Shown in pieces: positions 537 through 56,169 of a DNA stretch of 64,000 nt. The stretch is from Mustelus asterias (lineage: Eukaryota). The notes under the pieces are model-generated. The model was not told the DNA's origin, did no database searches, and saw only the letters and a list, made by a program, of their open reading frames with translations. The stretch lies in the NCBI RefSeq assembly GCF_964213995.1, contig NC_135825.1, forward strand, positions 12,586,001-12,650,000, given 5' to 3'. Numbering within the stretch: position 1 is the stretch's first letter; every line of letters begins with the position of its first letter. Position numbers and translations under genes: made by a program.

Positions 537-848
537 CAGTTGGCAGCATTGGAAGAGAGCATTGTGTATGCAAAGATAAACCACACTCAAAGGAACGCAG
601 CAGGAATGCACAGAGAGGGAAACGCCCCGTTGGATAATGATGAAATCACATATGCAGCAGTGCAGTTTCAGAACAACACGTCTACACGGAGAGGTGAAGT
701 GTCACGTCACTCAATTAACAACCCAGACAGTGTCATCTACAGCGCCGTCAGCATTCCGAGCCAGCCAGCACAGAGAAACCCAGAGACTCCAAGACTGGAC
801 ACTCCACAGGAATCCGAAATGACAATTTATGCTAACTTCACTCATTAG
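537..848 (+). CDS. Terminal coding exon (cytoplasmic tail) of an inhibitory immune receptor whose upstream exons lie outside the window; probably CD300/pIgR-like family
   Basis: Polypyrimidine tract, then tandem acceptor ttttag|cag| (AG 535-536 and 538-539, both phase 0). Open frame to TAG 846-848. Tyrosine motifs IVYAKI (561-578), ITYAAV (645-662), VIYSAV (732-749) fit the ITIM consensus; TIYANF (822-839) is ITSM-like. Family assignment is inferred from the neighbouring gene. Confidence 0.8.
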   Translation, partial: QLAALEESIVYAKINHTQRNAAGMHREGNAPLDNDEITYAAVQFQNNTSTRRGEVSRHSINNPDSVIYSAVSIPSQPAQRNPETPRLDTPQESEMTIYANFTH

Positions 849-1696
849 GAAAACCATTCCTGTTCCACACGTGCTGCCTATTGCTCCTTTCTTTGTGTTT
901 CAGTTCCATTCAATTCCTTCTGCCGTGAGCTGCCCGCATATTTACTTTTGTCCAATTCCTTCTGAAACTTTGGAGTTGTTCCCGGCATTCCCACTCCTCC
1001 TCCCAGTTTGGTATCATCAGCAAATGTAATCAATTCACCTGGAGTTTCTGAGTCCAGGTTAATCAATTCCGTGAGAGTGGTCCCATAACCAAGGCTTGTT
1101 GCACCCCACTCAATAAATCCAAAGATGTGCGGGTTAGGTTGATTGGCAATGCTAAATTGTCCCTTAGACTCAGGAGGATTAGCAGGGTAAATACGTGGGG
1201 TTTGGAGGATAGGGCCTGGGTGGGATAGTTATCGGTGCAAACTTGATAGGCCAAATGGCCTCCTTCTGCACTGTGGGATTCTAGGATCCTATGAATAATC
1301 ACCCCCTCAAAGATCCCTAGCTCCCTTGATAGCACTCTTGCCTCAGATTCATAGGTGCCAAGTTCAAGTTTCATACGAGGGCTTGGTTGCAAAATTTGAA
1401 TGTTGACACTCCACTGCAGTACTCCACTGTTGATGATCCCAGTGGCTGCCTTGCTTTTCACAAAAGTTTTCACTTGAGGGTGAGCTTAAAAATAAAGTTC
1501 ATTCAGTTGGGATAGAATGGGAGAAAAATGGGAGATAGGGTGTTCCCAGTGGTGAGCCAGGCACCCACGAGGGTTACAAATCCTTCAGGATTGGCCTGGA
1601 GTCTCCAGGGATTCAAGATCAATCTCCAGGACACTGTCATCTGCGTCCCTGGAGAAAAATCATTGGGACATTTTCGCTGGAGTTCAGACAAATGAG

Positions 1697-2578
1697 ACAG
1701 GGATCTCATAGAGACTTGTAAAATTCTAACAGGACTAGACAGGGTAGATGCAGGGATGATGTTCCTGATGGCGGGGGAGTCCAGAACCAGGGGTCACAGT
1801 CTGAGAATTTGGGGTAGGACATTTAGGACGGAAGTGAGGAGACATTTCTTCACCCAAAGAGTGGTGAGCCTGTGGAATTCATTACCACAGGAAGTAGTAT
1901 GGAGGGTCTTAGCTATGAGGAGACTGGTATGGAGGGTCTTAGCTATGAGGAGACTGGTATGGAGGGTCTTAGCTATGAGGAGAGATTGGGTAAACTGGGG
2001 TTGTTCTCCCTGGAAAGACGGAGAATGAGGGGAGATCTAATAGAGGTGTACAAGATTATGAAGGGTAGAGATAGGGTGAACAGTGGGAAGCTTTTTCCCA
2101 GGTCGGAGGTGACGATCACGAGGGGTCACGGGCTCAAGGTGAGAGGGGCGAAGTATAACTCAGATATCAGAGGGACGTTTTTTACACAGAGGGTGGTGGG
2201 GGCCTGGAATGCGCTGCCAAGTAGGGTGGTGGAGGCAGGCACGCTGACATCGTTTAAGACTTACCTGGATAGTCACATGAGCAGCCTGGGAATGGAGGGA
2301 TGCAAACGATTGGTCTAGTTGGACCAAGGAGCGGCACAGGCTTGGAGGGCCGAAGGGCCTGTTTCCTGTGCTGTACTGTTCTTTCTTTGTTCTAAAACAT
2401 TGAATGTATTCAAGAGGCGGCTGGATATAGCACTTGGGGCGAATGGGATCAAAGGTTATGGGGAGAAAGCAGGATTAGGCTATTGAGTTGGATGATCAGC
2501 CATGATCGTGATGAATGGGAGAGCAGGCTCGAAGGGCCAAATGGCCTCCTCCTGCTCCTATCTTCCATGTTTCTATGT
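1697..2578 (+). mobile_element. Two nested CR1 LINE 3' fragments (inner ~1897-2392)
   Basis: CR1 ORF2 C-terminal motifs (TRGHSL, FFTQRVV, LFSLERRRMRGDLIEVYKI). The outer copy resumes at ~2393. Confidence 0.85.
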
Positions 2579-3294
2579 AAAATATGTATATTTTTTGAAC
2601 ATTTCTCTTTACCTGATATAAAAATATTGAAAGTAAGGAAAAAGGCTGTTTGGCCAACAGTCAAACATCACCCAATTGGGTAATGAGTCTTGGGTGAGGA
2701 GCACCCAAAGGAAACCCATGCAGACACGGGGAGAATATGCAGACTCCGCACAGACAGTGACCTAAGCCGGGAATCGAACCCAGGTCCCTGCTGTGCTAAC
2801 CACTCTGCCTCCGTGCTGCCTCCCGGGTAGAAGAAGCTATTTAAAAAGACTCTCTTACATCAAAGTCGACATGGTTCATATCTGTGGAAGAAAAGCAGAA
2901 ATGACCGCACAACTTTGTAGAACTGAAAATTAAAATGATCTGCCTCAGCTCTGTTTTCTTTGAGGGTTTTCTTCACATCTGTTGCAATACCAGAAACCAT
3001 TTCTGTCCTACAACTGTGACAACCACACTGATGTATACATTAAAATCGCAAGTTTCTTCATTCTGTATTTCAGTGAGAACAAATGAAACACTCTGTTCCT
3101 CATTAATACTGGGGATCATAGAATCCCTACAGTGCAGAAGGAGGCCATTCAACCCATCGAGTCTGCACCGTCCATTAGCCCACCCAAGCCCTATTCCCCC
3201 AACCTCACATATTTACCCTACTAATCCCCTTGACACTAGGGTCAATTTATCATGGCCAATCAACCTCACCTACACATCTTTGGACTGTGAGAGG

Positions 3295-4846
3295 AATCCT
3301 AGAGTTCTAAAGGAGATAGCTGAAGAAATAGTGGAGGCGTTAGTTATGATCTTTCAAAAGTCACTGGAGTCAGGGAAAGTCCCAGAGGATTGGAAAATCG
3401 CTGTTGTAACCCCACTGTTCAAGAAGGGAACAAGAAAAAAGATGGAAAATTATAGGCCAATTAGCCTAACCTCAGTTGTTGGCAAAATTCTAGAATCCAT
3501 CGTTAAGGATGAGATTTCTAAATTCTTGGAAGTGCAGGGTCGGATTAAGACAAGTCAGCATGGATTTAGTAAGGGGAGGTCGTGCCTGACAAACCTGTTA
3601 GAGTTCTTTGAAGAGATAACAAATAGGTTAGACCAAGGAGAGCCAATGGATGTTATCTATCTTGACTTCCAAAAGGCCTTTGACAAGGTGCCTCACGGGA
3701 GACTGCTGAGTAAAATAAGGGCCCATGGTATTCGAGGCAAGGTACTAACATGGATTGACGATTGGCTGTCAGACAGAAGGCAGAGAGTTGGGATAAAAGG
3801 TTCTTTCTCAGAATGGCAACCGGTGACAAGTGGTGTCCCGCAGGGTTCAGTGTTGGGGCCACAGCTGTTCTCTTTATATATTAATGATCTAGATGACGGG
3901 ACTGGGAGCATTCTGGCCAAGTTTGCCGATGATACAAAGATAGGTGGAGGGGCAGGTAGTATTGAGGAGGTGGGAAGGCTGCAGAAAGATTTAGACAGTT
4001 TAGGAGAGTGGTCCAAGAAGTGGCTGATGAAATTCAACGTGGGCAAGTGCGAGGTCGTACACTTTGGAAAAAAGAATAGAGGCATGGACTATTTTCTAAA
4101 CGGTGACAAAATTCATAATGCTAAAGTGCAAAGGGACTTGGGAGTCCTAGTCCAGGATTCTCTAAAGGTAAACTTGCAGGTTGAGTCCGTAATTAAGAAA
4201 GCAAATGTAATGTTGTCATTTATCTCAAGAGGCTTGGAATACAAAAGCAGGGATGTACTTCTGAGGCTTTATAAAGCACTGGTTAGGCCCCATTTGGAGT
4301 ACTGTGAGCAATTTTGGGCCCCACACCTCAGGAAGGACATACTGGCACTGGAGCGGGTCCAGCGGAGATTCACACGGATGATCCCAGGAATGGTAGGCCT
4401 GACATACGATGAACGTCTGAGGATCGTGGGATTATATTCATTGGAGTTTAGGAGGTTGAGGGGAGATCTGATAGAAACTTACAAGATAATGAACGGCTTA
4501 GATAGGATGGACGTAGGGAAGTTGTTTCCATTAACAGGGGAGACTAGGACGCGGGGGCACAGCCTTAGAATAAAAGGGAGTCACTTTAGAACAGAGATGA
4601 GGAGAAATTTCTTCAGCCAGAGAGTGGTGGGTCTGTGGAATTCATTGCCACAGAGGGCTGTGGAGGCCGAGACGTTGAGCGTCTTCAAGACAGAAATTGA
4701 TAAATTCTTGATTTCTCGAGGAATTAAGGGCTATGGGGAGAGAGCGGGTAAATGGAGTTGAAATCAACCATGATTGAATGGTGGAGTGGACTCGATGGGC
4801 CGAATGGCCTTACTTCCGCTCCTATGTCTTATGGTCTTATGGTCTT
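3295..4846 (+). mobile_element. 5'-truncated CR1 LINE with uninterrupted RT ORF, inserted in an HE1 SINE
   Basis: NYRPISLTS, QHGF, YLDFQKAFDKV, SGVPQGSVLGP, KFADDTK; stop at 4761; (TATGGTCT)n tail. SINE halves at 3117-3294 and 4847-4972. Confidence 0.95.
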
Positions 4847-5140
4847 AAACCGGAGCAAACCCAGGCAGACACAGGGAGAATGTGCAAACTCCACACAGAC
4901 AGTGACCGAGGTCGGAATCGAACCCAGGTCCCTGGCACTGTGAGGCATCAGTGCTATCCACTGTGCCATCCACTGCAAATGATATTTATCATTCAAATGT
5001 GCATTCAAAAACTGAGGTGCTGTAGTCTGTCCACGTATGTAAAATCCAGAATAGGTTTTTGTTATAGTGTCTGAATGTGAGCTGAATGTGAGTCTGTCAC
5101 ATTGTAAAGGAAGCTCGCCTTTGCCTACTTTTACTTTTCA

Positions 5141-16759: not shown

Positions 16760-16814
16760 TTAACAAATTAGTACTTCAAAAATATGCAACCTTGCCACAA
16801 CAGGCGGACATGCT

Positions 16815-39121: not shown

Positions 39122-39161
39122 ATGGATTTTTCATTTCATTTTCTCGTGATCTCCTTTGCAG
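39122..39161 (+). CDS. Exon 1 (signal peptide) of CD300/pIgR-like activating receptor
   Basis: ATG 39122 encodes MDFSFHFLVISFA plus G, followed by a perfect donor GTAAGT at 39162 (phase 1). Joins the IgV exon in frame to give the hydrophobic leader MDFSFHFLVISFAVVWA. Confidence 0.75.
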
Positions 39162-42084: not shown

Positions 42085-42580
42085 GGCACTCGGGGTGAAT
42101 GGGCTCAAACGTTGTGGGGAAAAAGCAGGATTAGGATATTGTGTCGGACGATCAGCCATGATTTAGATAAGATGGAAGCAGGGAAGTTGTTTCCACTGGC
42201 AGGTGAAACTAGAACTAGGGGGCATAGCCTCAAAATAAAGGGGAAGCAGATTTAGGACTGAGTTGAGGAGGAACTTCTTCACACAAAGGGTTGTGAATCT
42301 GTGGAATTCCCTGCCCAGTGAAGCAGTTGAGGCTACCTCATTGAATGTTTTTAAGGCAAGGATAGATACATTTTTGAACAGTAAAGGAATTAAGGGTTAT
42401 GGTGAGCGGAGCTGAGTCCACAAAAAGATCAGCCATGATCTTATTGAATGGCGGAGCAGGCTCGAGGGGCCAGATGGCCTACTCCTGCTCCTAGTTCTTA
42501 TGTTCTTATGTGATGAATGGCGGAGCAGGCTCGAAGGGCCAAATGGCCTCCTCTTGCTCCTATCTTTTATGTTTCTATGT
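42085..42580 (+). mobile_element. Nested CR1 3' fragments
   Basis: TRGHSLKI / NFFTQRVVNLWN-type sequence and two CR1 3' UTRs. Confidence 0.75.
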
Positions 42581-43915
42581 TATTCATGTACCCATCCAGG
42601 TGCCTCTTAAATGTTGCTAATGCGCCTGCTTCCACCACCACCTCTGGCAGCGCGATCCAGGCACCCACCACTCTCTATGCGAAAAATGTCCCCCGCACAT
42701 CTCCCTTAAACTTTCCCCTCTCACCTTGAACCTGTGCCCCCTTGTAATTGAGATTGAGAGATTCCCGGGCATTAAGCGAATCTGGGAATATGGGGATAGC
42801 TTGGGAAATTGGAGTTGAGGTAGATTATCCAGGATCTTATTGAAAGATGCAGTCTCAAGGGGCTGTATTGCCTTCTCCTGCTCCTATTTCTTATGTTACA
42901 TTCTTAGAGCATGTTAAAAGGTCAACTCAGCTGTTTGCTCTATATCTCCCCTCAAGTTCCCTATCACACATGGCAGGCCAATGTGAAATCTGGCTGCCCC
43001 CCGCCCCCCTCCCCGCCCAGTGATATGTCTATAGCTGAGGCCAGACTTCCACCCTTATCAGGGAGTTAGTCCCATATGCAGGAACATGTCTGGAGTATTG
43101 AGTACAGTACCAGCCACCTCAGCATTAAGAAGTGTTTAGATGGCATTTGCAATGCCAAGGTGTGCAAGGTTATCCATAGAAATCCATAGAAACCCTGCAG
43201 TGCAGAAGGAAGCCACTTGGCTCATCGAGTCTGCACCGACCACAATCCCACCCAGGTCCCATTCTCGCATCCCCACATATTTACCCTGCCAATCACCCTA
43301 ATACTAGGGTCAATTTAGCATGGCCAATCAACCTAACCAGCAAATCTTTGGACTGTGGGACGAAACCAGAACACCCGGAGGAAACCCAGGCAGACACGGG
43401 GAAAACGTGCCAACTCCGCACAGACAGTGACCCAAGCCAGGAATCGAACCTGGGTTCCTGGCGCTGTGAGGCAGCAGTGCTAACCACTGTGCCACAGTGT
43501 CGCCGCAGTAAAAGTAAAGTAAAGTTTATTTATTAGTCACAAGTAAGGCTTACATTAACACTGCAATGAAGTTACTGTGAAATCCCCCTAGTCGCCACAG
43601 TCTGGCAGCTGTTTGTGTCAATGCAACTAACCAGCACATCTTTCAGAATGTGGGAGGAAACCGGAGCACCCGGAGGAAACCCACGCAGACACGGGGAGAA
43701 TGTGCAAACTCCACACAGAAATGACCCAAGCCAGGAATCGAACCCGGGTCCCTGACACTATGAGGCAGTAGTGCTAACCACTGTGGCACAGTGCCACCCA
43801 CATGGACCAAGTGCTGGAAAATGGGATTAAAGTAGTTGGGTGGTTTGTCCTTGACCGGCATTGATGCGATGGGCCAAAGGGCCGTTTTCTGTGCTGTAGA
43901 TTTCTATGACTCTAT

Positions 43916-44042
43916 GGGCGGGATTTTCCAGCCACGCTCCTCTCAAGACCGGAAAATCCTGCCCGAGGTCAATGAACCTTCGCATGGTCCGTGTCCCACC
44001 CACTACGATTCCCGTGGTAGGCGGGATGGGAGAATTCCGCCC
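43916..44042. mobile_element. MITE, PIF/Harbinger-like
   Basis: TIRs GGGCGGGATTTTCC / GGGCGGAATTCTCC; 3-bp TSD TAT. Confidence 0.7.
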
Positions 44043-44069
44043 TATGACGCTATGACCTCATTTATGGAA

Positions 44070-44585
44070 AGAAATTAATGCATTGGAAGTAGTTTGGAGA
44101 AGGTTTACCAGGCTAATACCTGGAATGGGCGCGTTGTCTCATGAGGAAAGGTTGGACAGGCTAGGCTTGTATCCACTAGAGTTTAGAAGACTAAGAGGTG
44201 ACTTGATTGAAACAAATCAGATCCTGAGGGGTATTGACTGGGTGGATGTGGGGAGGGTGTTTCCTCTTGTCAAAGAATCTAGAACTAGGGTCACTGTTTA
44301 AAAATAAGGGGAGATGAAGCAAAATGTTTTCTATCAGAAGATTGTGAGTCTTTAGATCTCTCTTTCTGAAAAGGCGACGGAAGCAGAATCCTTGAATATC
44401 TTTAAGGCAGAAGTGGATAGATTATTGGTACACAAGGGGGTTGGAGGGTAAAAGGTTACCGGGGGTTGACAGGAAGCAGATTTGAGGTTACTATCAAATC
44501 AGCCAGGATCTTATTAAACAGTGTAGCAGACTCAAGGGGCTGAATGGCCTATTCCTGCTGCTTGCTCACATGTTCATAAGTTCAT
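44070..44585 (+). mobile_element. CR1 3' fragment
   Basis: RRFTRLIPGM...LEFRRLRGDLIE. Confidence 0.8.
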
Positions 44586-45210
44586 GGACAGAATTCTCTG
44601 ATTGTGCTGGTCTAAAAGCCGGAAATTCCCGCCCGACTGTCAATGGGATTTCACCCACCCGTTAAAATTCCCGTGGCGGACAGGATGGGAGAATTCCGGC
44701 CTATATGCATGTGGAGAGTTGGCAGGTAATCTGATTGGCTGCCAGCTCTGTAATCCCAGAATGCCATGAGACAGGAGCAGCTAAGACTATAACCGGTCCT
44801 CAAGAAGGGGGTGGGTGTACACTGACTTAAAGGTGAGTCCGGGGATTGGGGGCGGGGGGGATAGGTGCAAGGCCCCAGAGAGGAGGGGGGGTGGGTATCA
44901 TGTTAGAAAGGCCAGGGGGAGAGGCTTAAAAATGAGGGAGGGATTGTCATCTTAGCGGCAGTGCCCCTGATGAGCACAGTGGAACACCCCTCCTCCCCAC
45001 TGTCCCAAAAAAGTACGGGGCTGGCTGACTTTTTTCCGTCTGCCCTGGAGGGCCAAACCTTGTGGTGGAGATGGAGTGTGTGAGACACTTAAGTGGTTGT
45101 TAATTGTCCATGTAAGGCAGCAGAGCAAATGTGCTGCCTGATGCCTCACCACTCCCCACCCCACCCCCACTGTAGGATGGGGTGAATCGGGAGTGGGCGG
45201 GATGGGATGG

Positions 45211-45519
45211 TTTACAAAATAATGGTTGGAATGCGAGTCTTTACAGGTAATCAAGTCTTAAAGGTACAGACAATGTGAGTGGAGAGAGCGTTAAGCACAG
45301 GTTAAAGAGATGTGTATTGTCTCCAGCCGGGACAGTTAGTGAGACTTTGCCAACTCGCATTCCAACCATCATTTTGTAAATTGAGTTTGTGTCGTTATAT
45401 GCCCTGTTTGTGAACAGAACTCCCACTTACCTGACGAAGGAACAGCGCTGTGAAAGCTAGTGGCTTTTGCTACCAAATAAAGCTGCTGGACTTTAACCTG
45501 GTGTTGTGAGACTTCTTAC
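45211..45519. mobile_element. Penelope pLTR fragment with 5' inversion and degenerate hammerhead
   Basis: 45211-45350 is antisense and 45353-45519 is sense to the Penelope 3' region. CUGACGA...GAAAGCUAGUGG at ~45427-45463, with stem II disrupted. Confidence 0.8.
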
Positions 45520-46699
45520 CCTGTTTTGCTAATCAGGTGCTAATCTTGTGGCTGTGAGTTTTAAAAAAATGCTTCCCCCCTCATTCAGATTCACAGATAA
45601 GAGTCAGAAGGAGCCGCAGAATAAATCAGCGCGCTACAGCAAACTGCTCATCCTGTTTGAAGTTTCAGTCAAACCAACAAAGAGAACCACAGCCCACACC
45701 CGACACCACATCAACTGCAGCAGAAAACCACAGCACTTGCATCGTCAGGTCCTCTGTTACCCAGCCTGCTGTGTAATCGAGCAGGGTGTGCATTGGGTCC
45801 TTCCTGCAGTGTGGCCTTCCACTCCAGGCAGTGTCCCTGTTATTTGCTGCGTCGCCTGAAGCAGGCCTGTGAAGCATCATCCTGAATTGAATGATTTTAG
45901 CCCACAGCGAGTGCAAATTGGATAAGATAACATCGACGGTGTGGACCTCGCCGGTCACACAGTCTGCTTTTCTCGCCATATTATAGAACCTAGAATCCCT
46001 ACAGTGCAGAAGGATTCCCTATGGCCCATCGAGTCTGCACCAACCACAATCCCACCCAGCCCCTATCCCCGTAGCCCCACGTATTTACCCTGCTAGTCCC
46101 CCTGACATTAAGTGGCAATTTAGCATGGCCAATCAACATAACCTGCACATCTTTGGACTGTGGGAGGAAACCCACGCAGACACGGGGGATAATGCCCAAA
46201 CTCCACACAGACAGTGACCCAAGCCGGGAATCGAACCTGGGTCCCTAGCACTGTGAGGCAGCAGTGCTAACCACTGTGCCACCGTATTCAATACTGACGA
46301 AGAAAAGAATCCTGGAGGTGCACCACACCGTCACACTGGTGGACGGGACCTGAAAAAGCCAGCAATGATGGGTTTCCAGAGATTTGTTTTTTAAAAGGGT
46401 GCACCAATCTCCAGTTTAAAAAAAGGAACCCTCACCCCCACACACAGAGACCCCGCCCCCCCTATGCACAAAGAGATCCCCCACATGCACATGGGTAAGT
46501 TCCCCCCCCCCCCGCCCCCACCACCCATGGCAACCCTCCCACCTTCACAGACAGGGGAATCACACCCTACAAGGACACTGGGAAACCTGCTCCCCAAGGA
46601 GACCCGCAGAGGAACCCCCCCCTCTCCCCCCCCAACTGTGTACTGCCCCCGGCATCCTGACACTGCCCCTATGGTAAACAGCGGTGCAAAATTCTAGAC

Positions 46700-47230
46700 T
46701 CACAGAATTGTTACACTGCGGAAAGAGGCCATTTGGCCTATCGTGTTTGCACCAGCTCTCCAAACTAGCATCATGACTTAGTCTCATTCCCCTGCCTTTT
46801 CCCCCCGCCCCCCGTACCCCTGCACATTGTTTCTATACCAATAATCACCCAATGCCCTCTCGAATGCCTCGACTGAACCTGTCTCCACCACATTTCCAGG
46901 CAGCGTATTCCAGACCCAAGCCACTCGGCGTGTGGATAGGTTTTTGTCACATCACACTTGCTTCTTTTGCAAATCACTTTAAGTCTGTGCCCTCTCATTC
47001 TTTTACCAGCGGGAACAGTTTCTCCCTGTCTACTCTGGCCAGCCCCCTCATGATTTTGAACATCTCTCTCTTATCAAATCTCCTCTTAGCCTTCTTCTCT
47101 CCAAGGAGAACAGTCCCAACCTCTCCAATGACTCTGAGGTCCAGTTAGTGTCTTGCATAAGTTCAGCATAACCTTGCTCTTGTACTCAATGCCTCTATTA
47201 AGAAAGCCCAGAATACCAGATACTTTCCCT
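46700..47230 (-). mobile_element. Degenerate CR1 3' fragment
   Basis: ILGFLNRGIEYKSK...; RGHRLKVICKRS. Confidence 0.7.
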
Positions 47231-49223
47231 TTCAGCAACTGCTCTTTAGGGTCCTCCTCCTTCACGTATTGTGTCTTGACAGGGCATTGGTGACCAGGGG
47301 CTTCCATTGGATTCCTAGATTCTCCTTCAGGCTGAAGTGTTTTGCCATTACCTTCTGCAGAATGGCCGCCAGGAAACTTTCCCACTTTTGTTGCCTGCTG
47401 TCACGCATATTGGAGGAATTTACAGGCTGTTAACTAACCTGTTTGGCCACGCTCTGAACTTTGCCATCATGTCCTAGAGTGGGACTTGAACCCAAAGTTC
47501 CTGGCCCAGAGGTAGGGATGCTAGCCATTGCATCACAAGACCACCGTCCCTCTTTAAGATCAGGTTATTGAAATCGATAGTATGAGGAAAGATTGTGAGT
47601 GGGTAAGAGAAATAAATGCCCGGTTGGGCATTGCCGATAAGGAGTGCCCACTCACAGTGTAATGGTCTGCCCTTGATACTCCATATCTTAATATCCTAGA
47701 ATCAGAAGGTTGAATTTTATTTCAGAGGCTAATGTCCCACGACCAGGGCTGAAAGTGAGAGGCGAACCTGCTTGGGCTGGTGGCATCCTGGCAATAGCCA
47801 ATTAAATGGCCACCACTGGGGCTGATATCCATAGTAAACCCACTAAAACCGTCGTCCAAACCAGGAAGCCAGCAGCTCAGACGCCTCAACAGCGCCACTA
47901 GTGGCAGTGGCCATTAATGGCGCTGCACCTGGAGGATGAGGGCACATCGCTGGCCATGTGCAAAGACAGGAAAATGGTGCCTGGGCATGCCAGTATCAGG
48001 CTGGCAGGCAGGTCCTGACAGGATCAGTGGGAGGGGGGAGTTCACAGAGGGCAGGCAACAACCCCGGCTACTGGATGGGGGAGGCTCATGGAGTTTCCAA
48101 AAATATGTCCCCACAAGCCAATAGGAGACCACCAGGTTGCTGTGGATCACCTCTCATTTCGGCAGTCTATCCCTGGATGCTGGTAAAATGCCTGTGGAGG
48201 AGGGAAAAGGCCTTTAATTGGCTACTTAAGTAGCTAAACTGGACTCCCAGTTGGCATTGCATGTGCCAACCTTTCTGCCACTGACAAAATGGTCTTTTGG
48301 TGTCAAGGGGTAGGGGAGAGAGTATGGCACAGAGATAGAGAATCAGTCACGACCATATTGAATGGTGGAGCAGGTTAGAGGGGCCGAGTGGCCTACTCAT
48401 GCTGCTATTTTCCATGTTTCTAAAATCATCAGGCATAGGCCCCACAGCATCCTGTGCCATTTTGCCGGCCTCCTTGCTTCCCAGCGCATTGTCAAGGGCG
48501 GGTAAAATTCTAACCATAATATAAGCACAGAAGAAGGCCAACCAGCTGGCTACATTTTACTGATCTGTGTGCAGGGATCCAGAGAGAAAGATCTCCAATT
48601 ACAGATTCCATGAGGCAAACCGTGAGCCATAGGAACTGCAAGAAGCAATACCTTAGACTAGAGTTGGCTGGACTCAGCTCATTGGGAATCTGAACAATGA
48701 GAGTGAGGCACAGATACAATGAAGTTTTTAAAATTTAAACTTATTTTATTAGTGTCGCAAGTAGGCTGACGTTTACACTGCAATGAAGTTACTGTGAAAA
48801 TCCCCAAGTCGCCGCACTCCGGCGCCTGTTCGGGTACACCGAGGGAGAATTTAGCACGGCCAATGCATCCAACCAGCACGTCTTTCGGACTGTGGGAGGA
48901 AAGCAGAGCATCAAGACAGGGGGGAGAACTCCACACAGACAGCGACCCAAGCCAGGAATCGAACCCAGGTCCCTGGCTTTGTGAGGCAGCAGTGCTAACC
49001 ACTGTGCCACCGTGCTGTGGTATGAACTGTCTTTATTTCAGACTAATATTAATTTCTGAGGACGAAAAATCCAGAAGTCCCTCAGGCCGCATCATTAGAA
49101 TGATCAAAATGGGATAGTATGTTTACGAGTCTTAATGCACATTTTTTAAAGTACTCTTTACCCTATTAAACTGTTAGGTTGATTTATGTTTTCTTGTACT
49201 TGTTATGCTTTCACATTGTACAG

Positions 49224-49556
49224 TTGTTTGGGCTGCATCAAATGGACCGGATGCTGTAAATGGAACGGTGGGACAATCAGTCCATATCAAGTGTCGATAC
49301 GACAAATATTACAGCAATTATCAAAAGTACTGGTGCAAAGGTGATGATCAGGAAGACTGTGCTATTGTGGTGCAAACCCACGGCCCAAAGAAGACAAGTA
49401 CTGATGGGAGAATCACCATTGTCGCTGATGATGAAGCAGGAGAATTTACAGTCACAATGGAACAGTTAACACAGAGCGATGAGGGCTTATACTGGTGTGG
49501 AATTGAAAGATTGTTATGGGACCTCCAAAGTCCTGTGGAACTTAAAATCAATGAAG
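49224..49556 (+). CDS. Exon 2: V-set Ig domain, CD300/pIgR/CMRF35-like
   Basis: Acceptor ttgtacag| at 49223; donor GAAG|gtagg at 49557; phase 1-1, 333 nt. Motifs GQSVHIKC, KYWCKG-x5-C (CX7C second disulfide), FTVTMEQL and DEGLYWCG are typical of CD300/pIgR-type V domains. Confidence 0.93.
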
Positions 49557-50184
49557 GTAGGATCTGAATGGTTTTATTAATTGTGTGCATCTGTAAGCTG
49601 TATAGTTTTATATTGCTTTCAGTACAATTTAGGATATGTTTTTCAACATTTCCAAAGTGGTTTTCAGTGGGAAGTTAGAATTCTGTTAAGGGTAAACCAG
49701 CAGAATGATGCAAAATAACAAATTGGGCTATCTGACCACGTGTCACGGTTGCCCCTCGCTGACTAAAATACTGGGGTTGGGGAGGGGAGCCCACCTACCC
49801 AGCAGAAGATGGCTGACTGGCTATTAATAGACTAAAGGATGAGAATTCCACCCCTCCCTTGGGGAGCTGCTGCCCACTTGTACTTCAGGAGGAGGTTGGA
49901 ACCGGTGAGAGTTTGGGGATCTTGCAGGCACCCGCAGAGGCGCAAGGGGGTTGGAGGGGTGTGAGGGTGGACGGATGGTGTTTGAGAGTCCATGGGAGGG
50001 AAGGAGGGCTGGAGGGGGTGATGGGCGGGGGGGAGGGGGGGTGGAGAAAAACCTTGGGGACCCTATGATGGGCCCAGGAGGGCAAGTTAATGAGGGAGGG
50101 CCCCTGCCCTCCACCAGCTCATACAGGAAAACCTGTTGGCCGCCTGGCCTTAGGTCTTTTCCCTGCCACTGGTTCAATCCTAGT

Positions 50185-50690
50185 CATAGAGTCGTAGAGT
50201 CATAGAGGTTTACAGCATGGAAACAGGCCCTTCGGCCCAAATTGTCCATGCCGCACTTTCTTTTTTAAAACCCCTAAGCTAATCCCAATTGCCCGCATTT
50301 GGCCCATATCCCTCTAAACCCATCGTACCCATGTGACTGTCTAAATGCTTTTTAAAAGACAAAATTGTACCCGCCTCTACTACTACCTCTGGCAGCTTGT
50401 TCCAGTCACTCACCATCCTCTGTGTGAAAGAATTGCCCCTCTGGACACTTTTGTATCTCTCCCCTCTCCCCTTAAACCTATCTCCTCTAGTTTTAGACTC
50501 CCCTACCTTTGGGAAAAGATATTGACTATCTGGCTGATCTGTGCCCCTCATTATTTTATAGACCTCTATAAGATCACCCCTCAGCCTCCTACGCTCCAGA
50601 GAAAAAAGTCCCAGTCTATCCAGCCTCTCCTTATAACTCAATCCATCAAGTCCCGGTAGCATCCTAGTAAATCTTTTCTGCATCCTGGTA
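50185..50690 (-). mobile_element. CR1 3' fragment
   Basis: QKRFTRMLPGL...RLRGDLIEVYKIM. Confidence 0.88.
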
Positions 50691-51751
50691 AATCCCTCCA
50701 GGGTAAGATCTTAAGTGGACACCAATTGCCCACCAAAGGGCCACAGTTGACCCAAAGGCACTAACACTACCCTACCATTGGTAAAATTGCACTGGGGACA
50801 GGGATGGGCAGTGTTGTAATATGCCTTTATTGGGCAGCAGCATGACATCACTAGAAGGGAAGTGTGTCATGGAATCTAGTCTTTCCTGACTTGTCACAAT
50901 GGATTCCATGACAGATGTGGTGAGCCAGCTAAACACCCATTGACTTTGCAGGAAGCAGAAGATCCCACCAGTGGGCGGGGCCAGGCAACTATGGTCTTAG
51001 TTTCACTTTTCCCTCTGAGCAGAGCACAGAACACATGTCTGATGTCTTCAGGTTTTCTACCTTTGTCCAAATATTCTCACTTGCCTCGTCTCAATAAATG
51101 AACCCACAATGTATTTATACAATCCCTTCTGAACGATCAGTGCCTGGATCATTATAACATAACAGACATGGAGGCGGCATGTACACCCCCCACTGCATTG
51201 AAGATACCATTCCCCCCACCCCAACCATCACACCCTCTGGCAAGCGAGCATTAAATTCAACCCAAAGATGTATAATTTTAGTACTAATATACCCATGTAA
51301 TTTTTCACGTTTTTAAATCACAAATTTAGGGAGGCATGGTGGCACAGTGGTTAGCACTGCTGCCTCACAGCACCAGAGACCTGGGTTCAATTCCGGCCTC
51401 GGGTCACTGTCTGTGTGGAGTTTGCATGTTCTCCCTGTGTCTGCGTGGGTTTCCTCCGGGTGCTCCAGTTTCCTCCCACAGTCCAAAGATGTGCGGGTTA
51501 GGTGGATTGGCCATGCTAAATTGACCCTTAGTGTCAGGGGAATGGACAGGATAAATATGTGGGATTACAGGAAGAGGGCCTGGGTGGGATTGTGGTCGGT
51601 GCAGACTCGATGGGCCAAATGGCCTTCTTCTGCACTGTAGGGATTCTATCATTCTATGAAATTGCAAATTTATCTATGATGGTTTAATCAGATGTGTAAC
51701 GCAACTTGGCAGTGCAATCTAACAACAATGAGGTTATATAATTTTTAACAG

Positions 51752-51800
51752 GTCCCAAAGTACTTCTTGCAATCTCTCCATCTGACAAGGAAATTCAAAG
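51752..51800 (+). CDS. Exon 3: short stalk (GPKVLLAISPSDKEIQ)
   Basis: Acceptor atttttaacag| and donor AAG|gtaaat. Phase 1 in and phase 2 out, exactly what bridges the IgV exon to the TM exon without a stop. Confidence 0.7.
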
Positions 51801-52353
51801 GTAAATGTCATGTCTGTTTAAAAAGGCCCAATCTGAACAATTATTCTGTCTCTACGCAATTGTGACTGCACTAAAGAAGGAACACCGAGGAGATTGATGA
51901 GGATGTGGGCCAGGACTGAAGAATGTGCAGTCATGAAGAAAGATTGGGTAGGCCGGCACTGTTTCCCTGGGAACAAAGGAGGCAAAGGGAAGATATAACT
52001 GAGACGTATAAAGTTATGAGGAGCCAGACAGACGGATGAAAAGGATTTATTTCCTTTAGCAGAGAGGCCAAAAAATAAGAGGGCATAGATTCAAAGTAAT
52101 TGGTAGAATTATTCAAGGGGAGGTGAGGAATGATTGTGGGGGTGAATTGACCTCTTGGGAGGATGGTCGAGGCAGAAATTCTCATTGCATCTTAAAAATA
52201 TAGCTGGAAATGGATTTGAAATGGCCTAGCTTACAGGGCTATGGACCAAGAGTTGGAATGTGGCATTAGGCTGAGAACACTCATTTTCGGGGCAGGCACA
52301 GACATGCCGGGCTGAATGGCCTCCTTCTGTTCCATTTTTCTGTGCAAAAATTG

Positions 52354-52680
52354 TGTAATGTCCCATTGACTGTGTTATGAGAATGCAATGGCTTCAATCA
52401 GGCCATTGAGGTTGGCCTATTGGAATACGAGCTCCCTGATTAAGGGCCCCTAAGTGAATTTGATTTTGTTTATTTGGTTGGAAGCAAAAAGATGTCCCTG
52501 ATTAAGGGCCAAATTGATGGGCCGACCAGGGAGCCTCTTGCCTTGTATTTAACCAGGCGTGTCAGTTCCTCAGGGGGTCCTAGGGTAGACTGCTGACTGA
52601 AAGCACTCTGTATGCCGTTGTCAGACTTGTAAATAAAGGGATTTTAGTGAAGGGACTTCTGCCTCTGATGTCTTATTACA
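52354..52680 (+). mobile_element. Possible solo LTR
   Basis: TGTAAT...ATTACA termini with internal AATAAA; no TSD seen. Confidence 0.45.
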
Positions 52681-53522
52681 GAGAGGTATTAAATTGTTTT
52701 TCTGGCAAGGTGCAGGCTGCCTTGAGAGTAGGATTTCAATATGATGAAGACAAATGCATTTTGGACACTCATGCCACAACTGTAAGCAGATATTTGTGAC
52801 TCTGCAATAATGTAATATGTGCAACATTGAACTGGCAGCTAGTTCTACATCTCCTGCTAAAGTCAATGAAAATAAAAGTCAGGAGAGATGGCACTATCAG
52901 TTGGCTGCCTCTTGCATTCTAATGCCAAATAGTTCAAATCCAACCCAGACCCAGAAGTGAGTGCCCTGTTACACCATGGATATATTTTTGTCATTCTTTA
53001 ACCACCAAAATCCACAACCCATTGCATTTGGAAGAATTTCCAGGACACTTATTGTTTTGTTCATTCTTTTATGGGATGTGGTCATCCCTGGCAAGCCCAG
53101 CATTTGTTGTCCATCCCTAATTACCCTTGGACCAGGTCAGTTCAGAGGGCAGTTAGCGGTCAACCACATTGCTGTGGATCTGGAGTCACATGTAGGCCAG
53201 ACTGGGTAAGGATGGCAGATTTCCTTCCCTAAACGATAATAGTGAACCAAATGGTTTTTTTTGCAACCATCAATGATTGTTTCATGGTCACCATTGCTAA
53301 GACCAGCTTTCAATTCCAGAATTTATTAATTGAATTGTGATTCCTTCCTTCGCTTTACCGATGATCAAAGGTAGGCTGATTGATCAGGTTGGATTTGTCC
53401 TGCTTTTTGTGTACAGGAGATACCTGGGCAATTTTCCACATGACTGGGTAGATGTCAGTGTTGTAGCTGCACTGGAACATCTTGGCAAGGCAATTTTGAT
53501 TTGATTTGATTTATTATTGTCA

Positions 53523-54197
53523 CATAAGAACATAAGAACATAAGAAATAGGAGCAGGAGTAGGCCATCTAGCCCCTCGAGCCTGCCCCGCCATTCAATAA
53601 GATCATGGCTGATCTGAAGTGGATCAGTTCCACTTACCCGCCTGATCCCCATAACCCCTAATTCCCTTACCGATCAGGAATCCATCTGTCCGTGATTTAA
53701 ACATATTCAACGAGGTAGCCTCCACCACTTCAGTGGGCAGAGAATTCCAGAGATTCACCACCCTCTGAGAGAAGAAGTTCCTCCTCAACTCTGTCCTAAA
53801 CTGACCCCCCTTTATTTTGAGGCTGTGCCCTCTAGTTCTAGCTTCCTTTCTAAGTGGAAAGAATCTCTCCACCTCTACCCTATCCAGCCCCTTCCTTATC
53901 TTATACGTCTCTATAAGATCCCCCCTCAGCCTTCTAAATTCCAACGAGTACAAACCCAATCTGCTCAGTCTCTCCTCATAATCAACATCCCTCATCTCCG
54001 GTATCAACCTGGTGAACCTTCTCTGCACTCCCTCCAAGGCCAATATATCCTTCCGCAAATAAGGGGACCAATACTGCACACAGTATTCCAGCTATGGCCT
54101 CACCAATGCCCTGTACAGATGCAGCAAGACATCTCTGCTTTTATATTCTATCCCCCTTGCGATATAGGCCAACATCCCATTTGCCTTCTTGATCACA
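53523..54197 (-). mobile_element. Young CR1 3' fragment
   Basis: ORF 53624-54079, (CATAAGAA)n tail; nearly identical to 63563-64000. Confidence 0.92.
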
Positions 54198-54199
54198 TG

Positions 54200-54665
54200 T
54201 ATTAGTATACAGTGAAAAGTATTGTTTCTTGCACGCGATACAGACAAGGTATATCGTTCATAGAGAAGGAAAGGAGAGAGTGCAGAATGTAGTGTTAGTC
54301 ATCGCTAAGGTGTAGAGAAAGATCAACTTCATGCGAGGTAGGTCCATTCAAAAGTTTGATGGCAGCAGGGAAGAAGCTGTTCTTGAGTCGGTTGGTACGT
54401 GACCTCAGACTTTTGTATCTTTTTCCTGATGGAAGAAGGTGGAAGAGAGAATGTCCGGGGTACTTAATTATGCTGGCTGCTTTTCCGAGGCAGCGGCAAG
54501 TGTAGATAGTGTCAGTGGGTGGAAGGCTGGTTTGCGTGATGGATTGGGCTACATTCACGACCCTTGTCTTGCGGTCTTGGGCAGAGCTGGAGTCATACCA
54601 AGCTGTGATACAACCAGAAAGAATGCTTTCTATGATGCATCTGTAGAAGTTGGTGAGAGTTGGAG
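54200..54665 (-). mobile_element. Rex1/Babar-type 3' fragment
   Basis: FYRCIIESILSGCITAWY...RLKNSFFP; same family as 16815-17370. Confidence 0.8.
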
Positions 54666-54669
54666 AGAA

Positions 54670-55140
54670 TCTTGGAGCCTTCAGTACTACTGCTGAAATA
54701 TTGTCAGGACCCATTTCCTTTGCAGTATTCAGTGCCCTCAGCCGTTTCTTGATACCATGTGGAGTGAATCGAATTGGTTGAAGACTGACATCTGAGATGC
54801 TGGAGACCTCCAGAGCAGGCTGAGATGGATCTTCCACTCAGTACTTCTGGCTGAAGATTATGACAGATGTTTCAGCCTTATCCTTTTGGTGCTCCCAATA
54901 TTGAGGTTGAGGATATGAGAGTCCTCCAGTGCGTTGTTTAATTGTCCACCACCATTCACGGCTGGATGTGGCAGGGCTGCAGAGCTCAGATCTGATCCAT
55001 TGGTTGTGGAATTGCTTAGCTTTGTCTATTGCTGGCTGCTTATGTTGTTTGGAACGCGAGTAGTCCTGTTTGGTAGCTTCACCAGGTCGGCAGTTCATTT
55101 TTAGGTATGTCTGGTGTTTCTCCTGGCATGTCCTGTTGCA
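54670..55140 (-). mobile_element. Non-LTR retrotransposon ORF2 fragment (host of the nested CR1 and Rex1 insertions)
   Basis: LCSPATSSREWWWTIKQ and KEMGPDNISAVVLK pre-RT motifs; clade not resolved. Confidence 0.65.
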
Positions 55141-55204
55141 TTGAACCCCTCTTATTGATCTGTCTGCTGAGTGAAATAGCTCCGTCAACATCTGTGGAGA
55201 GAAG

Positions 55205-55330
55205 GGACAGGATTTTCCAGCCAGATCATTGAGATTGTCTGGTCCAGCTGAAAGACAGTGGATTTTTGGCTGAGCTACCAAGTCCCCTGCGGCAGTGGGT
55301 TCAGCTTGATAAGGCCAGAAAATCCCGGCC
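55205..55330. mobile_element. MITE, PIF/Harbinger-like
   Basis: Imperfect 16-bp TIRs; 3-bp TSD AAG. Confidence 0.6.
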
Positions 55331-55703
55331 AAGATAACCTTTCAGTTCTGATGCAGAGTTTGCATCTGAGACGTTGCACTCAGTTGCTCTTTCCATCACT
55401 GCTGACTGACCTGTTTCCACAGCTTCTGTTTTTGCATCAACATCTTTGCAGAAGGAGATTGTCAGAAGCTGATGTTTTTCTGTCATCACATTACCATATC
55501 TAGTGAGAAAAGGGAACTGGGTATTTGCCACTTCATCGCCCCCTAGGCACAGGCTAGTCCCTGAACGTGAAGCACATTCCAACTCGATACTTCCTATGCA
55601 CTCAGATAATGGATAAACTATCACAGGTCAAAGTGAGTGCAGTTCAGCAATTTGCCAGATGGACCAGAAGCATAGAAGCAGCAAAGACCACAATATTCCA
55701 CCA

Positions 55704-55978
55704 GAGGCACGGTGGCACAGTGGTTAGCACTGCTGCCTCACAGCGCCAGGGACTCGGGTTCGATTCCTGTCTTGGGTCACTGTCTGTGTGGAATCTGCCT
55801 TTGCCTGCATGGGTTTCCTCCCACAGTCCAAAAGACGTGCTGGATAGATGCATCGGCCATGCTAAATTCTCCCTCAGTGTACCCGAACAGGCGCCAAAGT
55901 GTGGCGACTAGGGGATTTTCACAGTAACTTCATTGCAGTGTTAATGTAAGCCTACTTGTGACTCTGATAACTTTAACT
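55704..55978 (+). mobile_element. HE1-related V-SINE with alternative 3' tail (type B), representative copy
   Basis: HE1 head and core, but tail ...gtggcgactaggggattttcacagtaacttcattgcagtgttaatgtaagcctacttgtgac. Copies at ~7915, 12221, 13340, 18495, 24182, 28420, 31433, 32315, 32935, 40878, 43510, 48735, 58799, 59762 and 61636. Confidence 0.85.
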
Positions 55979-56069
55979 TGAGCGTAACCAAATGATTCAC
56001 ATGTTGAAGTTAACTCCATAGATTCAGGAATCAATTTTGATGAAACCATTTTGCCTCCTATCTTCATAG

Positions 56070-56169
56070 GCAGAAGAATTACCTGTACTATTTCATATGG
56101 AGTGTTTTACGTTGGATCTTCCTCGCCATTCTCCTCCTTTGGGCCATTTTAGCCAAACTGAAAATGTAA
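56070..56169 (+). CDS. Exon 4: transmembrane helix with intramembrane Arg and a ~4-residue tail
   Basis: Acceptor cctcctatcttcatag| (phase 2). Encodes RQKNYLYYFIWSVLRWIFLAILLLWAILAKLKM*, with Arg codon CGT at 56110-56112 and TAA at 56167-56169. Donor GTAAGT follows at 56175. Confidence 0.82.

What the first reader, a model, noticed from the sequence alone, without database searches (positions are those of the whole stretch)
537..56169. Paired inhibitory/activating CD300/pIgR-like receptor locus in a shark
Seen: an upstream gene ends in a tail with three ITIMs and an ITSM-like motif. The next recognisable gene on the same strand is a single-IgV receptor with a charged TM residue and no signalling tail. 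Established: this layout defines paired receptor clusters (mammalian CD300, teleost pIgRL/MDIR/NITR, LILR). Inference: both genes are members of one tandem family with opposing signalling, a system little characterised in cartilaginous fish. The inhibitory gene's ectodomain is not visible here.
Basis: partly seen in the sequence, partly recalled or inferred. Interest (0 to 1): 0.85.

Follow-up and report, generated by a model that had tools for sequence, protein, structure and literature searches.

The report
Shark MDIR-type inhibitory and activating receptor genes
The window from the starry smooth-hound shark holds the last exon of an inhibitory immune-receptor gene and, 38 kb further on, a complete small activating receptor gene; both belong to a receptor family already described in skates, so this is a good annotation, not a new system.

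Summary
Both observations are real. At 537-848 (+) lies a terminal exon with three ITIM motifs and one ITSM-like tyrosine. At 39122-56169 (+) lies a four-exon gene for a 173-aa receptor with a leader, one V-type Ig domain, a short stalk, a transmembrane helix with an Arg, and almost no tail. The genome is Mustelus asterias. RefSeq already annotates the second gene as XP_078098259.1, "CMRF35-like molecule 2".

The ITIM tail is homologous to the tails of shark, ray, chimaera and skate receptors. These include the skate proteins named Modular Domain Immune-type Receptor (MDIR) 2 and 3, whose ectodomains are CD300/pIgR-type V domains plus C2 domains. The Arg transmembrane segment of the 173-aa gene matches that of activating MDIR-type receptors, including skate MDIR5. 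Contigs from two public runs leave the genome exactly at the tail exon's acceptor, so the exon is spliced and transcribed.

"One extended family with opposing signalling, in tandem" is therefore supported. A matched pair is not. The small receptor's V domain forms its own orthologous lineage (50-75% identity, shark to chimaera). It is only 30-41% identical to other Mustelus family V domains. The ITIM gene's ectodomain remains unseen.

First-stage notes of this scan report the same receptor cluster in other windows of this genome.

The parts
537..848 (+). Last coding exon of an ITIM-tailed receptor gene. It encodes 103 aa (537-845) plus the stop (846-848). ITIMs centre on Y11, Y39 and Y68, with an ITSM-like motif at Y98. 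The rest of the gene lies upstream of the window.
   Evidence: Searches give the sequence and motifs. One search gives homologues at E 3.9e-33 to 1.1e-14. Y2 is kept in 47 of 47 homologous tails; contigs of runs X8 and X1 stop fitting the window at 535, at the acceptor.
849..1144 (+). 3' untranslated region, at least as far as the SINE-like repeat that starts near 1084. An AATAAA lies at 1112.
   Evidence: X8 record 17 lies on 535-1144 with 0 other letters. AATAAA at 1112 and 1491.
39122..39161 (+). Exon 1 (coding part) of the 173-aa receptor gene. It encodes the leader MDFSFHFLVISFA plus the first base of codon 14. The donor is gtaagt at 39162.
   Evidence: sequence; P0001 residues 1-13.
49224..49556 (+). 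Exon 2: CD300/pIgR-type V-set Ig domain with the canonical Cys pair (C37, C105) and a second pair (C51, C59). Phase 1 at both ends.
   Evidence: V-set E 2.4e-18; 100% identity to P0001. CD300LF E 1.5e-19; pIgR domains E 3e-14 to 1.9e-10, with both Cys of the extra pair aligned. Foldseek top hits are CD300lf and CD300a.
51752..51800 (+). Exon 3: a 49-nt stalk exon (GPKVLLAISPSDKEIQ, plus two bases of the next codon). Skipping it shifts the frame of the TM exon, as in Cetorhinus isoform X2 (P0002).
   Evidence: position and flanking ag/gt.
56070..56169 (+). Exon 4: transmembrane helix with Arg155 (FIWSVLRW...), a four-residue tail KLKM, and the stop TAA at 56167-56169.
   Evidence: R155, W151 and W156 are invariant in 5 species; the motif is shared with activating MDIR-type proteins.
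56175..56180 (+). A consensus splice donor (gtaagt) 5 nt behind the stop codon. It is probably the relic of the donor that leads to a short cytoplasmic exon in multi-domain activating relatives, or a donor inside the 3' UTR.
   Evidence: sequence; relatives continue after the helix (e.g. P0030 ...TRKSQSLNESD...), while the orthologues of this gene all stop here.

Best explanation
The window is a piece of the MDIR (modular domain immune-type receptor) cluster of Mustelus asterias, which is CD300/pIgR-like. It contains two items.

(1) The 3'-terminal exon of an inhibitory family member. Its tail has three ITIMs. Once the tyrosines are phosphorylated, they would recruit SH2 phosphatases of the SHP-1/SHP-2/SHIP type and dampen signalling (inferred).

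(2) 38 kb downstream on the same strand lies the complete gene for a 173-aa receptor. It has one CD300-type V domain, a short stalk, a transmembrane helix with a conserved Arg, and a four-residue tail. Such a protein cannot signal alone. It would need an adaptor with an acidic transmembrane residue and an ITAM, of the FcR-gamma/DAP12/CD3-zeta kind (inferred).

The transmembrane exon of gene 2 is the same module used by the multi-domain activating MDIRs. Its V domain, however, is a separate, slowly evolving lineage kept one-to-one from chimaera to sharks. The two genes are therefore family neighbours with opposite signalling potential. They are not an ectodomain-matched pair.
For: Identity and annotation:
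- The IgV exon is 100% identical to XP_078098259.1, 'CMRF35-like molecule 2 [Mustelus asterias]'.
- Every exon boundary was read in the window.

Tail family:
- A tail-only search of 1.84 billion representatives returned five true relatives, all chondrichthyan.
- The two that carry an ectodomain have V+C2 (P0012) or C2 (P0013) of the MDIR type.
- A profile search gave 114 proteins, among them skate MDIR2, MDIR3 and MDIR5.
- A tail HMM hits 47 of 129 fetched proteins. Of these, 44 have at least one CD300-type V domain, and the hits include MDIR2 (E 4.5e-10) and MDIR3 (E 2.9e-6) within that small set.
- Tyrosines are conserved: Y1 in 36 of 47 tails, Y2 in 47 of 47, Y3 in 39 of 44, Y4 in 24 of 27.

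Transcription and splicing:
- X8 record 17 is a 976-letter contig. 610 letters lie on 535-1144 with no mismatch and 366 letters run beyond 535 off the window. X8 depth is 0 over the intron bins 400-513.
- X1, from another organism, has a 354-letter contig on 535-797 with 90 letters beyond 535, an in-frame 15-nt gap, and no change listed at the stop codon.
- The DNA-like run X7 runs straight across 359-553.

TM module:
- The motif W.[VIL].[RK]W is found in 41 of 129 proteins. These include P0001, four orthologues and the whale-shark fused model P0102, the Mustelus 611-aa P0030 (XP_078098258.1, the neighbouring accession) and skate MDIR5.
- None of the 47 tail-bearing proteins has it.

V lineage:
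- 50-75% identity to 7 orthologous V domains; 30-46% (median 38%) to 182 others.
- The lineage forms a group of exactly 8 tips with SH-aLRT 89.

Fold:
- AlphaFold2 mean pLDDT 75.9.
- The best PDB matches are CD300lf, CD300a, CD300c, pIgR D1, NKp44 and TREM.
Against: - The ectodomain exons of the ITIM gene lie outside the window.
- No Mustelus protein with this exact tail was found among candidates of 230-731 aa or 126-400 aa. The exon may therefore be unannotated, or part of a longer or pseudogene model.
- Its closest homologue, Cetorhinus P0009 (65%), and the Mustelus paralogue P0010 are annotated without Ig domains.
- None of the runs is on record as RNA. They are Logan contigs, so the spliced reading rests on where contigs lie, at depth 2.2 (X8) and 6.3 (X1). 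The off-window letters were not shown.
- All four coding differences listed for X1 are non-synonymous, which also fits relaxed constraint.
- The 129-protein set was gathered with a profile containing V and C2 domains, so '44 of 47' is partly by construction.
- Adaptor pairing and phosphatase recruitment are inferred, not tested. One paper's abstract states that the FcR gamma chain was not found in cartilaginous fish (PMC4016189).
- Expression of the 173-aa gene was not tested here.
Confidence: 0.78

Rival explanations
1. The ITIM exon belongs to a truncated, Ig-less or decaying family member. This would be a transcript encoding only stalk, TM and tail, or a remnant of a broken gene, rather than a full receptor.
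For: The best tail homologue, Cetorhinus P0009 (229 aa, 65%), and the Mustelus paralogue P0010 (204 aa) are RefSeq models without any Ig domain. Carcharodon P0013 has only the C2 domain. No Mustelus protein with this tail was found. Contig depth is low, and all four listed coding differences in the related organism are non-synonymous.
Against: The exon is fully open, with an intact acceptor and all four tyrosine motifs. The related organism keeps the frame (an in-frame 15-nt gap), and no change is listed at its stop codon. 44 of 47 homologous tails sit on V-bearing proteins. Short Gnomon models are often just incomplete. The whale-shark fused model P0102 shows a V-C2-V gene directly upstream of the orthologue of the 173-aa gene.
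Confidence: 0.22
2. One reading: the two genes are a true paired receptor, with inhibitory and activating forms sharing closely similar ectodomains and the same ligand, like CD300A/C or KIR2DL/DS.
For: The genes are in tandem on one strand, carry opposite signalling modules and belong to the same superfamily.
Against: The V domain of the 173-aa gene is 30-41% identical to the 11 other Mustelus family V domains seen. It is 30-46% identical to 182 family V domains overall. Its lineage of 8 tips contains no protein with an ITIM tail. It has one-to-one orthologues down to the chimaera, unlike fast-duplicating pairs.
Confidence: 0.07
3. The ITIM exon splices to an unrelated ectodomain (Siglec, PECAM, LILR or VJ-C1 type), so the neighbourhood with the CD300-like gene is coincidental.
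For: The ectodomain is unseen. First-stage notes (unchecked) report other ITIM receptor families elsewhere in this genome.
Against: The tail-only search found no protein with any other ectodomain type. Tail homology extends to skate MDIR2 and MDIR3. Five other family genes lie on the same 58.7-Mb scaffold, two of them with accession numbers adjacent to the 173-aa gene's.
Confidence: 0.03

Closest known systems
Modular domain immune-type receptors (MDIR1-5) of the clearnose skate. Source: Cannon et al. 2006, Immunogenetics 58:362, seen only as a citation and in passages of PMC3031540. The paper itself is not held. Details of the individual MDIRs are recalled.
   Same: A multigene family with CD300/pIgR/TREM-like V domains, with ITIM-tailed forms and forms with a charged TM residue. 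The window's tail matches MDIR2 and MDIR3 tails. The window's TM motif is present in MDIR5. The profile search returns MDIR2, 3 and 5.
   Different: The 173-aa gene has a single V domain and no C2 domain. Its V domain forms a separate, conserved lineage. No batoid orthologue appeared, though that word-based search may have missed it. Whether it corresponds to skate MDIR1 could not be checked.
Mammalian CD300 / CMRF35-like molecules (CD300A, C, LF and LB)
   Same: One V-type Ig domain with a second Cys pair, a short stalk and a single TM. Family members carry either ITIM tails or a charged TM residue with a short tail. The sequence match to CD300LF chains is E 1.5e-19. The top Foldseek matches are 33-37% identical. 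RefSeq names the gene CMRF35-like molecule 2.
   Different: Orthology is not shown: identity is only about 35%, and pIgR domains score similarly per domain. Synteny with the CD300 locus could not be tested. The charged residue here is Arg within a W..x.RW motif shared with MDIRs.
Polymeric Ig receptor (pIgR) and teleost pIgR-like genes
   Same: The V domain type is the same, including the KYWC...C pair. The best whole-chain PDB hit by sequence is pIgR, because four of its domains each match. RefSeq names many cluster members 'polymeric immunoglobulin receptor-like'.
   Different: There is one V domain instead of 2-5, no long cytoplasmic tail, and a charged TM. No evidence of Ig binding exists. 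The abstract of PMC4016189 states that PIGR was not found in cartilaginous fish.

Membership tests
MDIR family (chondrichthyan CD300/pIgR-like modular receptors) | Significant sequence similarity to proteins deposited as Modular domain immune-type receptors | tested here: met
   The profile search returns MDIR3 (E 2.6e-85), MDIR5 (5.6e-78) and MDIR2 (1.7e-60). The tail HMM hits MDIR2 residues 311-412 and MDIR3 residues 612-701. The TM motif is in MDIR5.
MDIR family (chondrichthyan CD300/pIgR-like modular receptors) | CD300/pIgR/TREM-type V domain in the ectodomain | tested here: met
   Met for the 173-aa gene. For the ITIM gene the ectodomain lies outside the window and could not be tested (closed).
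MDIR family (chondrichthyan CD300/pIgR-like modular receptors) | C2/I-set second domain type (the ...HHQYYC... module) alternating with V | tested here: not met
   There is no C2 exon anywhere in the window, and the 173-aa protein has one V only. By recall, MDIRs have one to six domains, so this may not be obligatory.
MDIR family (chondrichthyan CD300/pIgR-like modular receptors) | A family that contains both ITIM-tailed and charged-TM members | tested here: met
   47 of 129 proteins carry the tail and 41 of 129 carry the Arg-TM motif. None carries both.
Mammalian CD300 family | Single V domain with two disulfide pairs, and either an ITIM tail or a charged TM | tested here: met
   C37/C105 and C51/C59 are invariant in 5 species. 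The extra pair aligns with that of pIgR. The fold matches CD300lf, CD300a and CD300c.
Mammalian CD300 family | Orthology or conserved synteny with the CD300 locus | not testable with these tools
pIgR | Two or more tandem V domains and a long cytoplasmic tail | tested here: not met
   One V exon, and the tail is KLKM.
Classical paired receptors (matched activating/inhibitory pair) | Closely similar ectodomains on opposite signalling modules | tested here: inconclusive
   The ectodomain of this ITIM gene is unseen. The evidence leans against a match. The V domain is 30-41% identical to 11 Mustelus family V domains. None of the 44 tail-bearing proteins with V domains falls in the 8-tip lineage of the 173-aa gene.
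Classical paired receptors (matched activating/inhibitory pair) | Tandem linkage of genes with ITIM and charged-TM signalling types | tested here: met
   Both lie on the + strand, with the ITIM gene's stop at 848 and the next gene's ATG at 39122.
ITIM / ITSM motifs | (S/I/V/L)xYxx(I/V/L) for ITIM and TxYxx(V/I) for ITSM (consensus recalled) | tested here: met
   Three ITIMs are met: IVYAKI, ITYAAV, VIYSAV. The ITSM is not met, because TIYANF has F at +3. The paralogue P0010 has TVYATV at that place.

The most novel reading that the evidence does not exclude
The 173-aa gene is not just one more cluster member. It would be a single-copy activating receptor kept nearly unchanged in architecture since before the split of chimaeras and sharks: same length (171-175 aa), same stop, and an invariant Arg flanked by Trp. 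It sits inside a fast-evolving MDIR cluster and borrows that cluster's activating TM module. Such conservation implies one fixed, ancient ligand. The ligand could be a lipid, as for CD300, or polymeric IgM/J chain, as for pIgR and FcmuR. That would make this gene a candidate for the long-missing cartilaginous-fish counterpart of the pIgR/FcmuR/CD300 ancestor. A related question is which adaptor serves its Arg in a lineage where the FcR gamma chain was reported absent.
Probability: 0.12. Interest if true: 0.6.

Novelty: new member of a known kind. Interest (0 to 1): 0.3.

Why it matters
The finding gives a clean, exon-level description of two Mustelus members of the MDIR / CD300-pIgR-like cluster. 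It also shows that an ITIM exon, found in no Mustelus protein model that I could retrieve, is spliced and transcribed.

The wider point is modest. Cartilaginous fish have a large cluster that mixes ITIM-tailed and Arg-TM receptors built from shared modules. Within it sits one small activating receptor that is conserved across Chondrichthyes. The family is barely treated in print. My searches found only papers that cite the 2006 skate report, and a 2019 review of cartilaginous-fish immunity had no occurrence of ITIM or pIgR. Functional work on the conserved 173-aa receptor and its adaptor would therefore be new. The system as such is not new.

Tried and rejected

**An annotated Mustelus protein with the exact tail.** None was found in three searches:
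- among the representatives, where the best hit was 65% identical, from Cetorhinus;
- in the profile search over candidates of 230-731 aa;
- in the P0009 tail search over candidates of 126-400 aa, which found only P0009 itself among 18 candidates.

Proteins over 731 aa were not covered, so absence from the annotation is not proven.

**Further Ig exons in the window.** None were found. tblastn of 127 proteins gave only the four known exons, plus four weak repeat-like hits at 1944-2102, 4847-4972, 17123-17230 and 54346-54573.

Orthologues in Cetorhinus, Heterodontus, Heptranchias and Callorhinchus, plus the whale-shark fused model, end at the same place.

**Other blanks.**
- The ESM Atlas gave no usable hit for the tail.
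- Pfam has no family for the tail or the TM exon.
- Rfam gave no match in the window at gathering thresholds.
- The search of earlier findings by sequence was blank.

**Papers.** Cannon et al. 2006 (PMC3701310) and the 2010 review (PMC2823954) are not held. What I say about individual skate MDIRs beyond the database names is recalled. Supplementary files were not requested.

**The spliced model.** I never joined exons. Exons were searched one at a time. The full-length sequence used afterwards is the database protein P0001, as returned.

Full report
**What is in the sequence**

The window has no N. Behind the acceptor ttttag|cag, an open frame runs from 537 to the stop at 846-848. Its 103 residues hold four tyrosines. 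Three sit in ITIM consensus (IVYAKI, ITYAAV, VIYSAV) and one in TIYANF, which is ITSM-like but has F at +3. Shuffles of the same residues average 0.14 ITIM matches, and 17 of 100,000 reach three.

A motif scan of all six frames found one convincing IgV exon, at 49178-49564. Pfam scores it as V-set at E 2.4e-18.

**Identity of the second gene**

I searched the IgV exon alone. It is 100% identical to a 173-aa RefSeq protein, XP_078098259.1, "CMRF35-like molecule 2 [Mustelus asterias]" (P0001). The window is therefore from the starry smooth-hound.

Reading the window against P0001 gives four coding exons:

| Exon | Coordinates | Content |
|---|---|---|
| 1 | 39122-39161 | leader |
| 2 | 49224-49556 | IgV domain |
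| 3 | 51752-51800 | stalk (49 nt) |
| 4 | 56070-56169 | TM plus stop |

All splice sites are AG/GT and the phases are consistent. The exon lengths sum to 522 nt, which is 173 codons plus the stop.

Orthologues of 171-175 aa exist in Cetorhinus, Heterodontus, Heptranchias and Callorhinchus, and a whale-shark fused model (P0102) carries the same V domain and C-terminus. All end within a few residues after the helix. Arg155 and its flanking Trp residues are invariant in the five aligned species. The stop 5 nt before the consensus donor at 56175 is therefore ancient, not a recent lesion.

The AlphaFold2 model (mean pLDDT 75.9) matches best CD300lf, CD300a, CD300c, pIgR D1, NKp44 and TREM structures. 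By sequence, CD300LF scores E 1.5e-19. Four pIgR domains score 3e-14 to 1.9e-10 each, with the extra Cys pair aligned.

**The family of the ITIM tail**

I searched the tail exon alone against 1.84 billion representatives. It gave seven hits at E up to 0.001. Five are true relatives:

| Protein | Species | Length | Identity to the tail | E-value |
|---|---|---|---|---|
| P0009 | Cetorhinus | 229 aa | 65% | 3.9e-33 |
| P0010 | Mustelus (paralogue) | 204 aa | 56% | 3.0e-20 |
| P0012 | Heptranchias | 418 aa | 52% | 4.5e-19 |
| P0013 | Carcharodon | 315 aa | 46% | 1.1e-14 |

The fifth listed row at E below 1e-10 (P0011), together with two weaker rows, is repeat-like and unrelated.

P0012 is leader, CD300-type V, C2, stalk, TM, then this tail.

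A profile of these proteins plus the window tail found 114 proteins in sharks, rays, skates and chimaera. RefSeq names them "polymeric immunoglobulin receptor-like", "Fc receptor-like", "CMRF35-like" or "uncharacterized". Three clearnose-skate entries are named Modular domain immune-type receptor 2, 3 and 5.

Passages of PMC3031540 describe MDIRs of the clearnose skate and zebrafish as multigene families of activating and inhibitory receptors. [quoted passage not shown] The passages cite Cannon et al. 2006, which is not held here.

Among the 129 proteins fetched:
- 47 carry a homologous tail, including MDIR2 and MDIR3.
- 44 of those 47 carry at least one CD300-type V domain.
- The three without a V domain are the short models P0009, P0010 and P0013.

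This set was gathered with a profile that includes V and C2 columns, so the count is partly by construction. The tail-only search is the unbiased test, and it found no other kind of ectodomain. Tyrosine 2 is kept in 47 of 47 tails, tyrosine 1 in 36 of 47, tyrosine 3 in 39 of 44 and tyrosine 4 in 24 of 27.

**Is the tail exon used?**

The look-up of sequencing runs found no holder on record as RNA. The four runs laid were all Logan contigs. Where the contigs lie is still informative.

- **X8.** A 976-letter contig has 610 letters on 535-1144 without any mismatch. Its other 366 letters run beyond 535 and do not lie on the window. X8 has no depth over 400-513.
- **X1 (a different organism).** A 354-letter contig lies on 535-797 with 90 letters beyond 535. 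It has an in-frame 15-nt gap at 603 and four listed coding differences, all non-synonymous and none breaking an ITIM (I14V, H16R, T48A, I67M). A second X1 contig covers the stop codon with no change listed there.
- **X7 (the large run).** It crosses the acceptor (359-553), as genomic DNA should.

Two organisms therefore show the same break at the AG, with the exon starting at 537. I read this as splicing to upstream exons. The off-window letters were not shown, so their coding content is unknown.

**How the two genes relate**

The transmembrane motif W.[VIL].[RK]W of the 173-aa protein occurs in 41 of the 129 proteins. These include the 611-aa Mustelus receptor P0030 and skate MDIR5. P0030 is XP_078098258.1, the accession next to P0001. 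The motif occurs in none of the 47 tail-bearing proteins. The signalling modules are therefore mutually exclusive alternatives within one family.

The V domain is another matter:
- It is 50-75% identical to seven orthologous V domains, and 30-46% (median 38%) to the other 182.
- The eight form exactly one group in a tree of 190 V domains, with SH-aLRT 89. There are few columns, and a long newt branch joins next to the group, which may be an artefact.
- Within Mustelus it is 30-41% identical to 11 V domains of P0030, P0047, P0115 and P0128. Those share 49-96% among themselves.

No ITIM-tailed protein carries a V domain of this lineage. The two genes are thus cluster neighbours with opposite signalling potential, not an ectodomain-matched pair.

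All six Mustelus family proteins seen lie on one scaffold of 58,715,561 bases. The whale-shark model P0102 fuses a V-C2-V gene to the orthologue of the 173-aa gene. This suggests that an MDIR gene lies directly upstream there too.

First-stage notes of this scan (unchecked) report V/C2 receptor genes from about 574 kb before to 285 kb beyond this window. They also report a paralogous signalling exon 36.7 kb before it.

**Mechanism**

Shown here: the anatomy of both genes, homology of the tail, TM and V modules, conservation of the tyrosines and of Arg155, and contig evidence for splicing of the tail exon.

Inferred from established immunoreceptor biology:
- The phosphorylated ITIMs recruit SH2-domain phosphatases.
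- The Arg-TM receptor, with its four-residue tail, needs an ITAM adaptor with an acidic TM residue.

The abstract of PMC4016189 states that PIGR, FcRL and the FcR gamma chain were not found in cartilaginous fish. The identity of the adaptor is therefore open and could not be searched here.

**Surroundings**

The 38 kb between the genes, and the introns, are filled with repeats:
- reverse-transcriptase ORFs at 2935-4761, 13958-14713 (-) and 62690-63190;
- many SINE-like copies;
- a 19-bp tandem array at 27650-28308.

There is no other gene-like ORF and no Rfam match at gathering thresholds.

**Verdict**

The locus is a Mustelus member of a family known from the skate since 2006, and one of the two genes is already annotated. 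New here are the exon-level anatomy, evidence that an ITIM exon found in no retrieved Mustelus protein model is spliced, and recognition that the small activating receptor is a separate lineage conserved across Chondrichthyes. I rate it a new member of a known kind, of modest interest.

Noticed in passing
window 56167-56180: The stop codon of the 173-aa receptor lies 5 nt before a consensus donor (gtaagt). Multi-domain activating relatives continue past this point into a short cytoplasmic tail. The orthologues of this gene in four other species, and the whale-shark fused model, all stop here, so the truncation is old.
   Followed up: partly
window 51752-51800 and 56070-56149: Skipping the 49-nt stalk exon shifts the TM exon into a frame that ends after about 26 non-hydrophobic residues. 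RefSeq annotates exactly such an isoform in Cetorhinus (P0002, 154 aa). This could be a soluble form made by exon skipping.
   Followed up: partly
P0102 (Rhincodon typus, 535 aa): This RefSeq model fuses a V-C2-V MDIR ectodomain, through about 45 unrelated residues, to the orthologue of the 173-aa receptor. It is probably a read-through or mis-joined model. It hints that an MDIR gene lies directly upstream of the orthologue on the same strand in the whale shark.
   Followed up: partly
P0128 (Mustelus asterias, 1400 aa, same scaffold): A giant family member with six V-C2 modules whose inner V domains are 87-96% identical to one another. This points to very recent internal module duplication or gene conversion.
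   Followed up: partly
P0009 (Cetorhinus), P0010 (Mustelus), P0013 (Carcharodon): Three RefSeq models carry the stalk, TM and ITIM tail without a V domain, and two of them have no Ig domain at all. They may be incomplete models or genuine Ig-less or V-skipped isoforms. All Ig exons here are phase 1, so skipping keeps the frame.
   Followed up: no
window 27650-28308: A 19-bp tandem repeat of about 35 copies with 93% matches. It produces long artificial ORFs rich in Pro/Thr or Gly/Trp on both strands.
   Followed up: partly
window 2935-4761 (+), 13958-15221 (-), 62690-63190 (+): LINE-type reverse-transcriptase ORFs. The first is a 608-aa open frame (RVT_1, E 4.7e-33) and may be a young copy.
   Followed up: partly
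window 603-617 and 607, in runs X1 and X9: A related organism (X1) has an in-frame 15-nt gap in the ITIM tail plus four non-synonymous differences and no listed synonymous one. Run X9 shows a T>C at 607 (M24T). The tail evolves fast outside the tyrosine motifs.
   Followed up: partly
P0008 (Lissotriton helveticus, TMIGD3-like, 167 aa): The V domain of this newt protein joins next to the 173-aa receptor's lineage in the V-domain tree (43% identity over 75% of the exon). It sits on a long branch, so the placement may be false, but it could mark a tetrapod relative.
   Followed up: no
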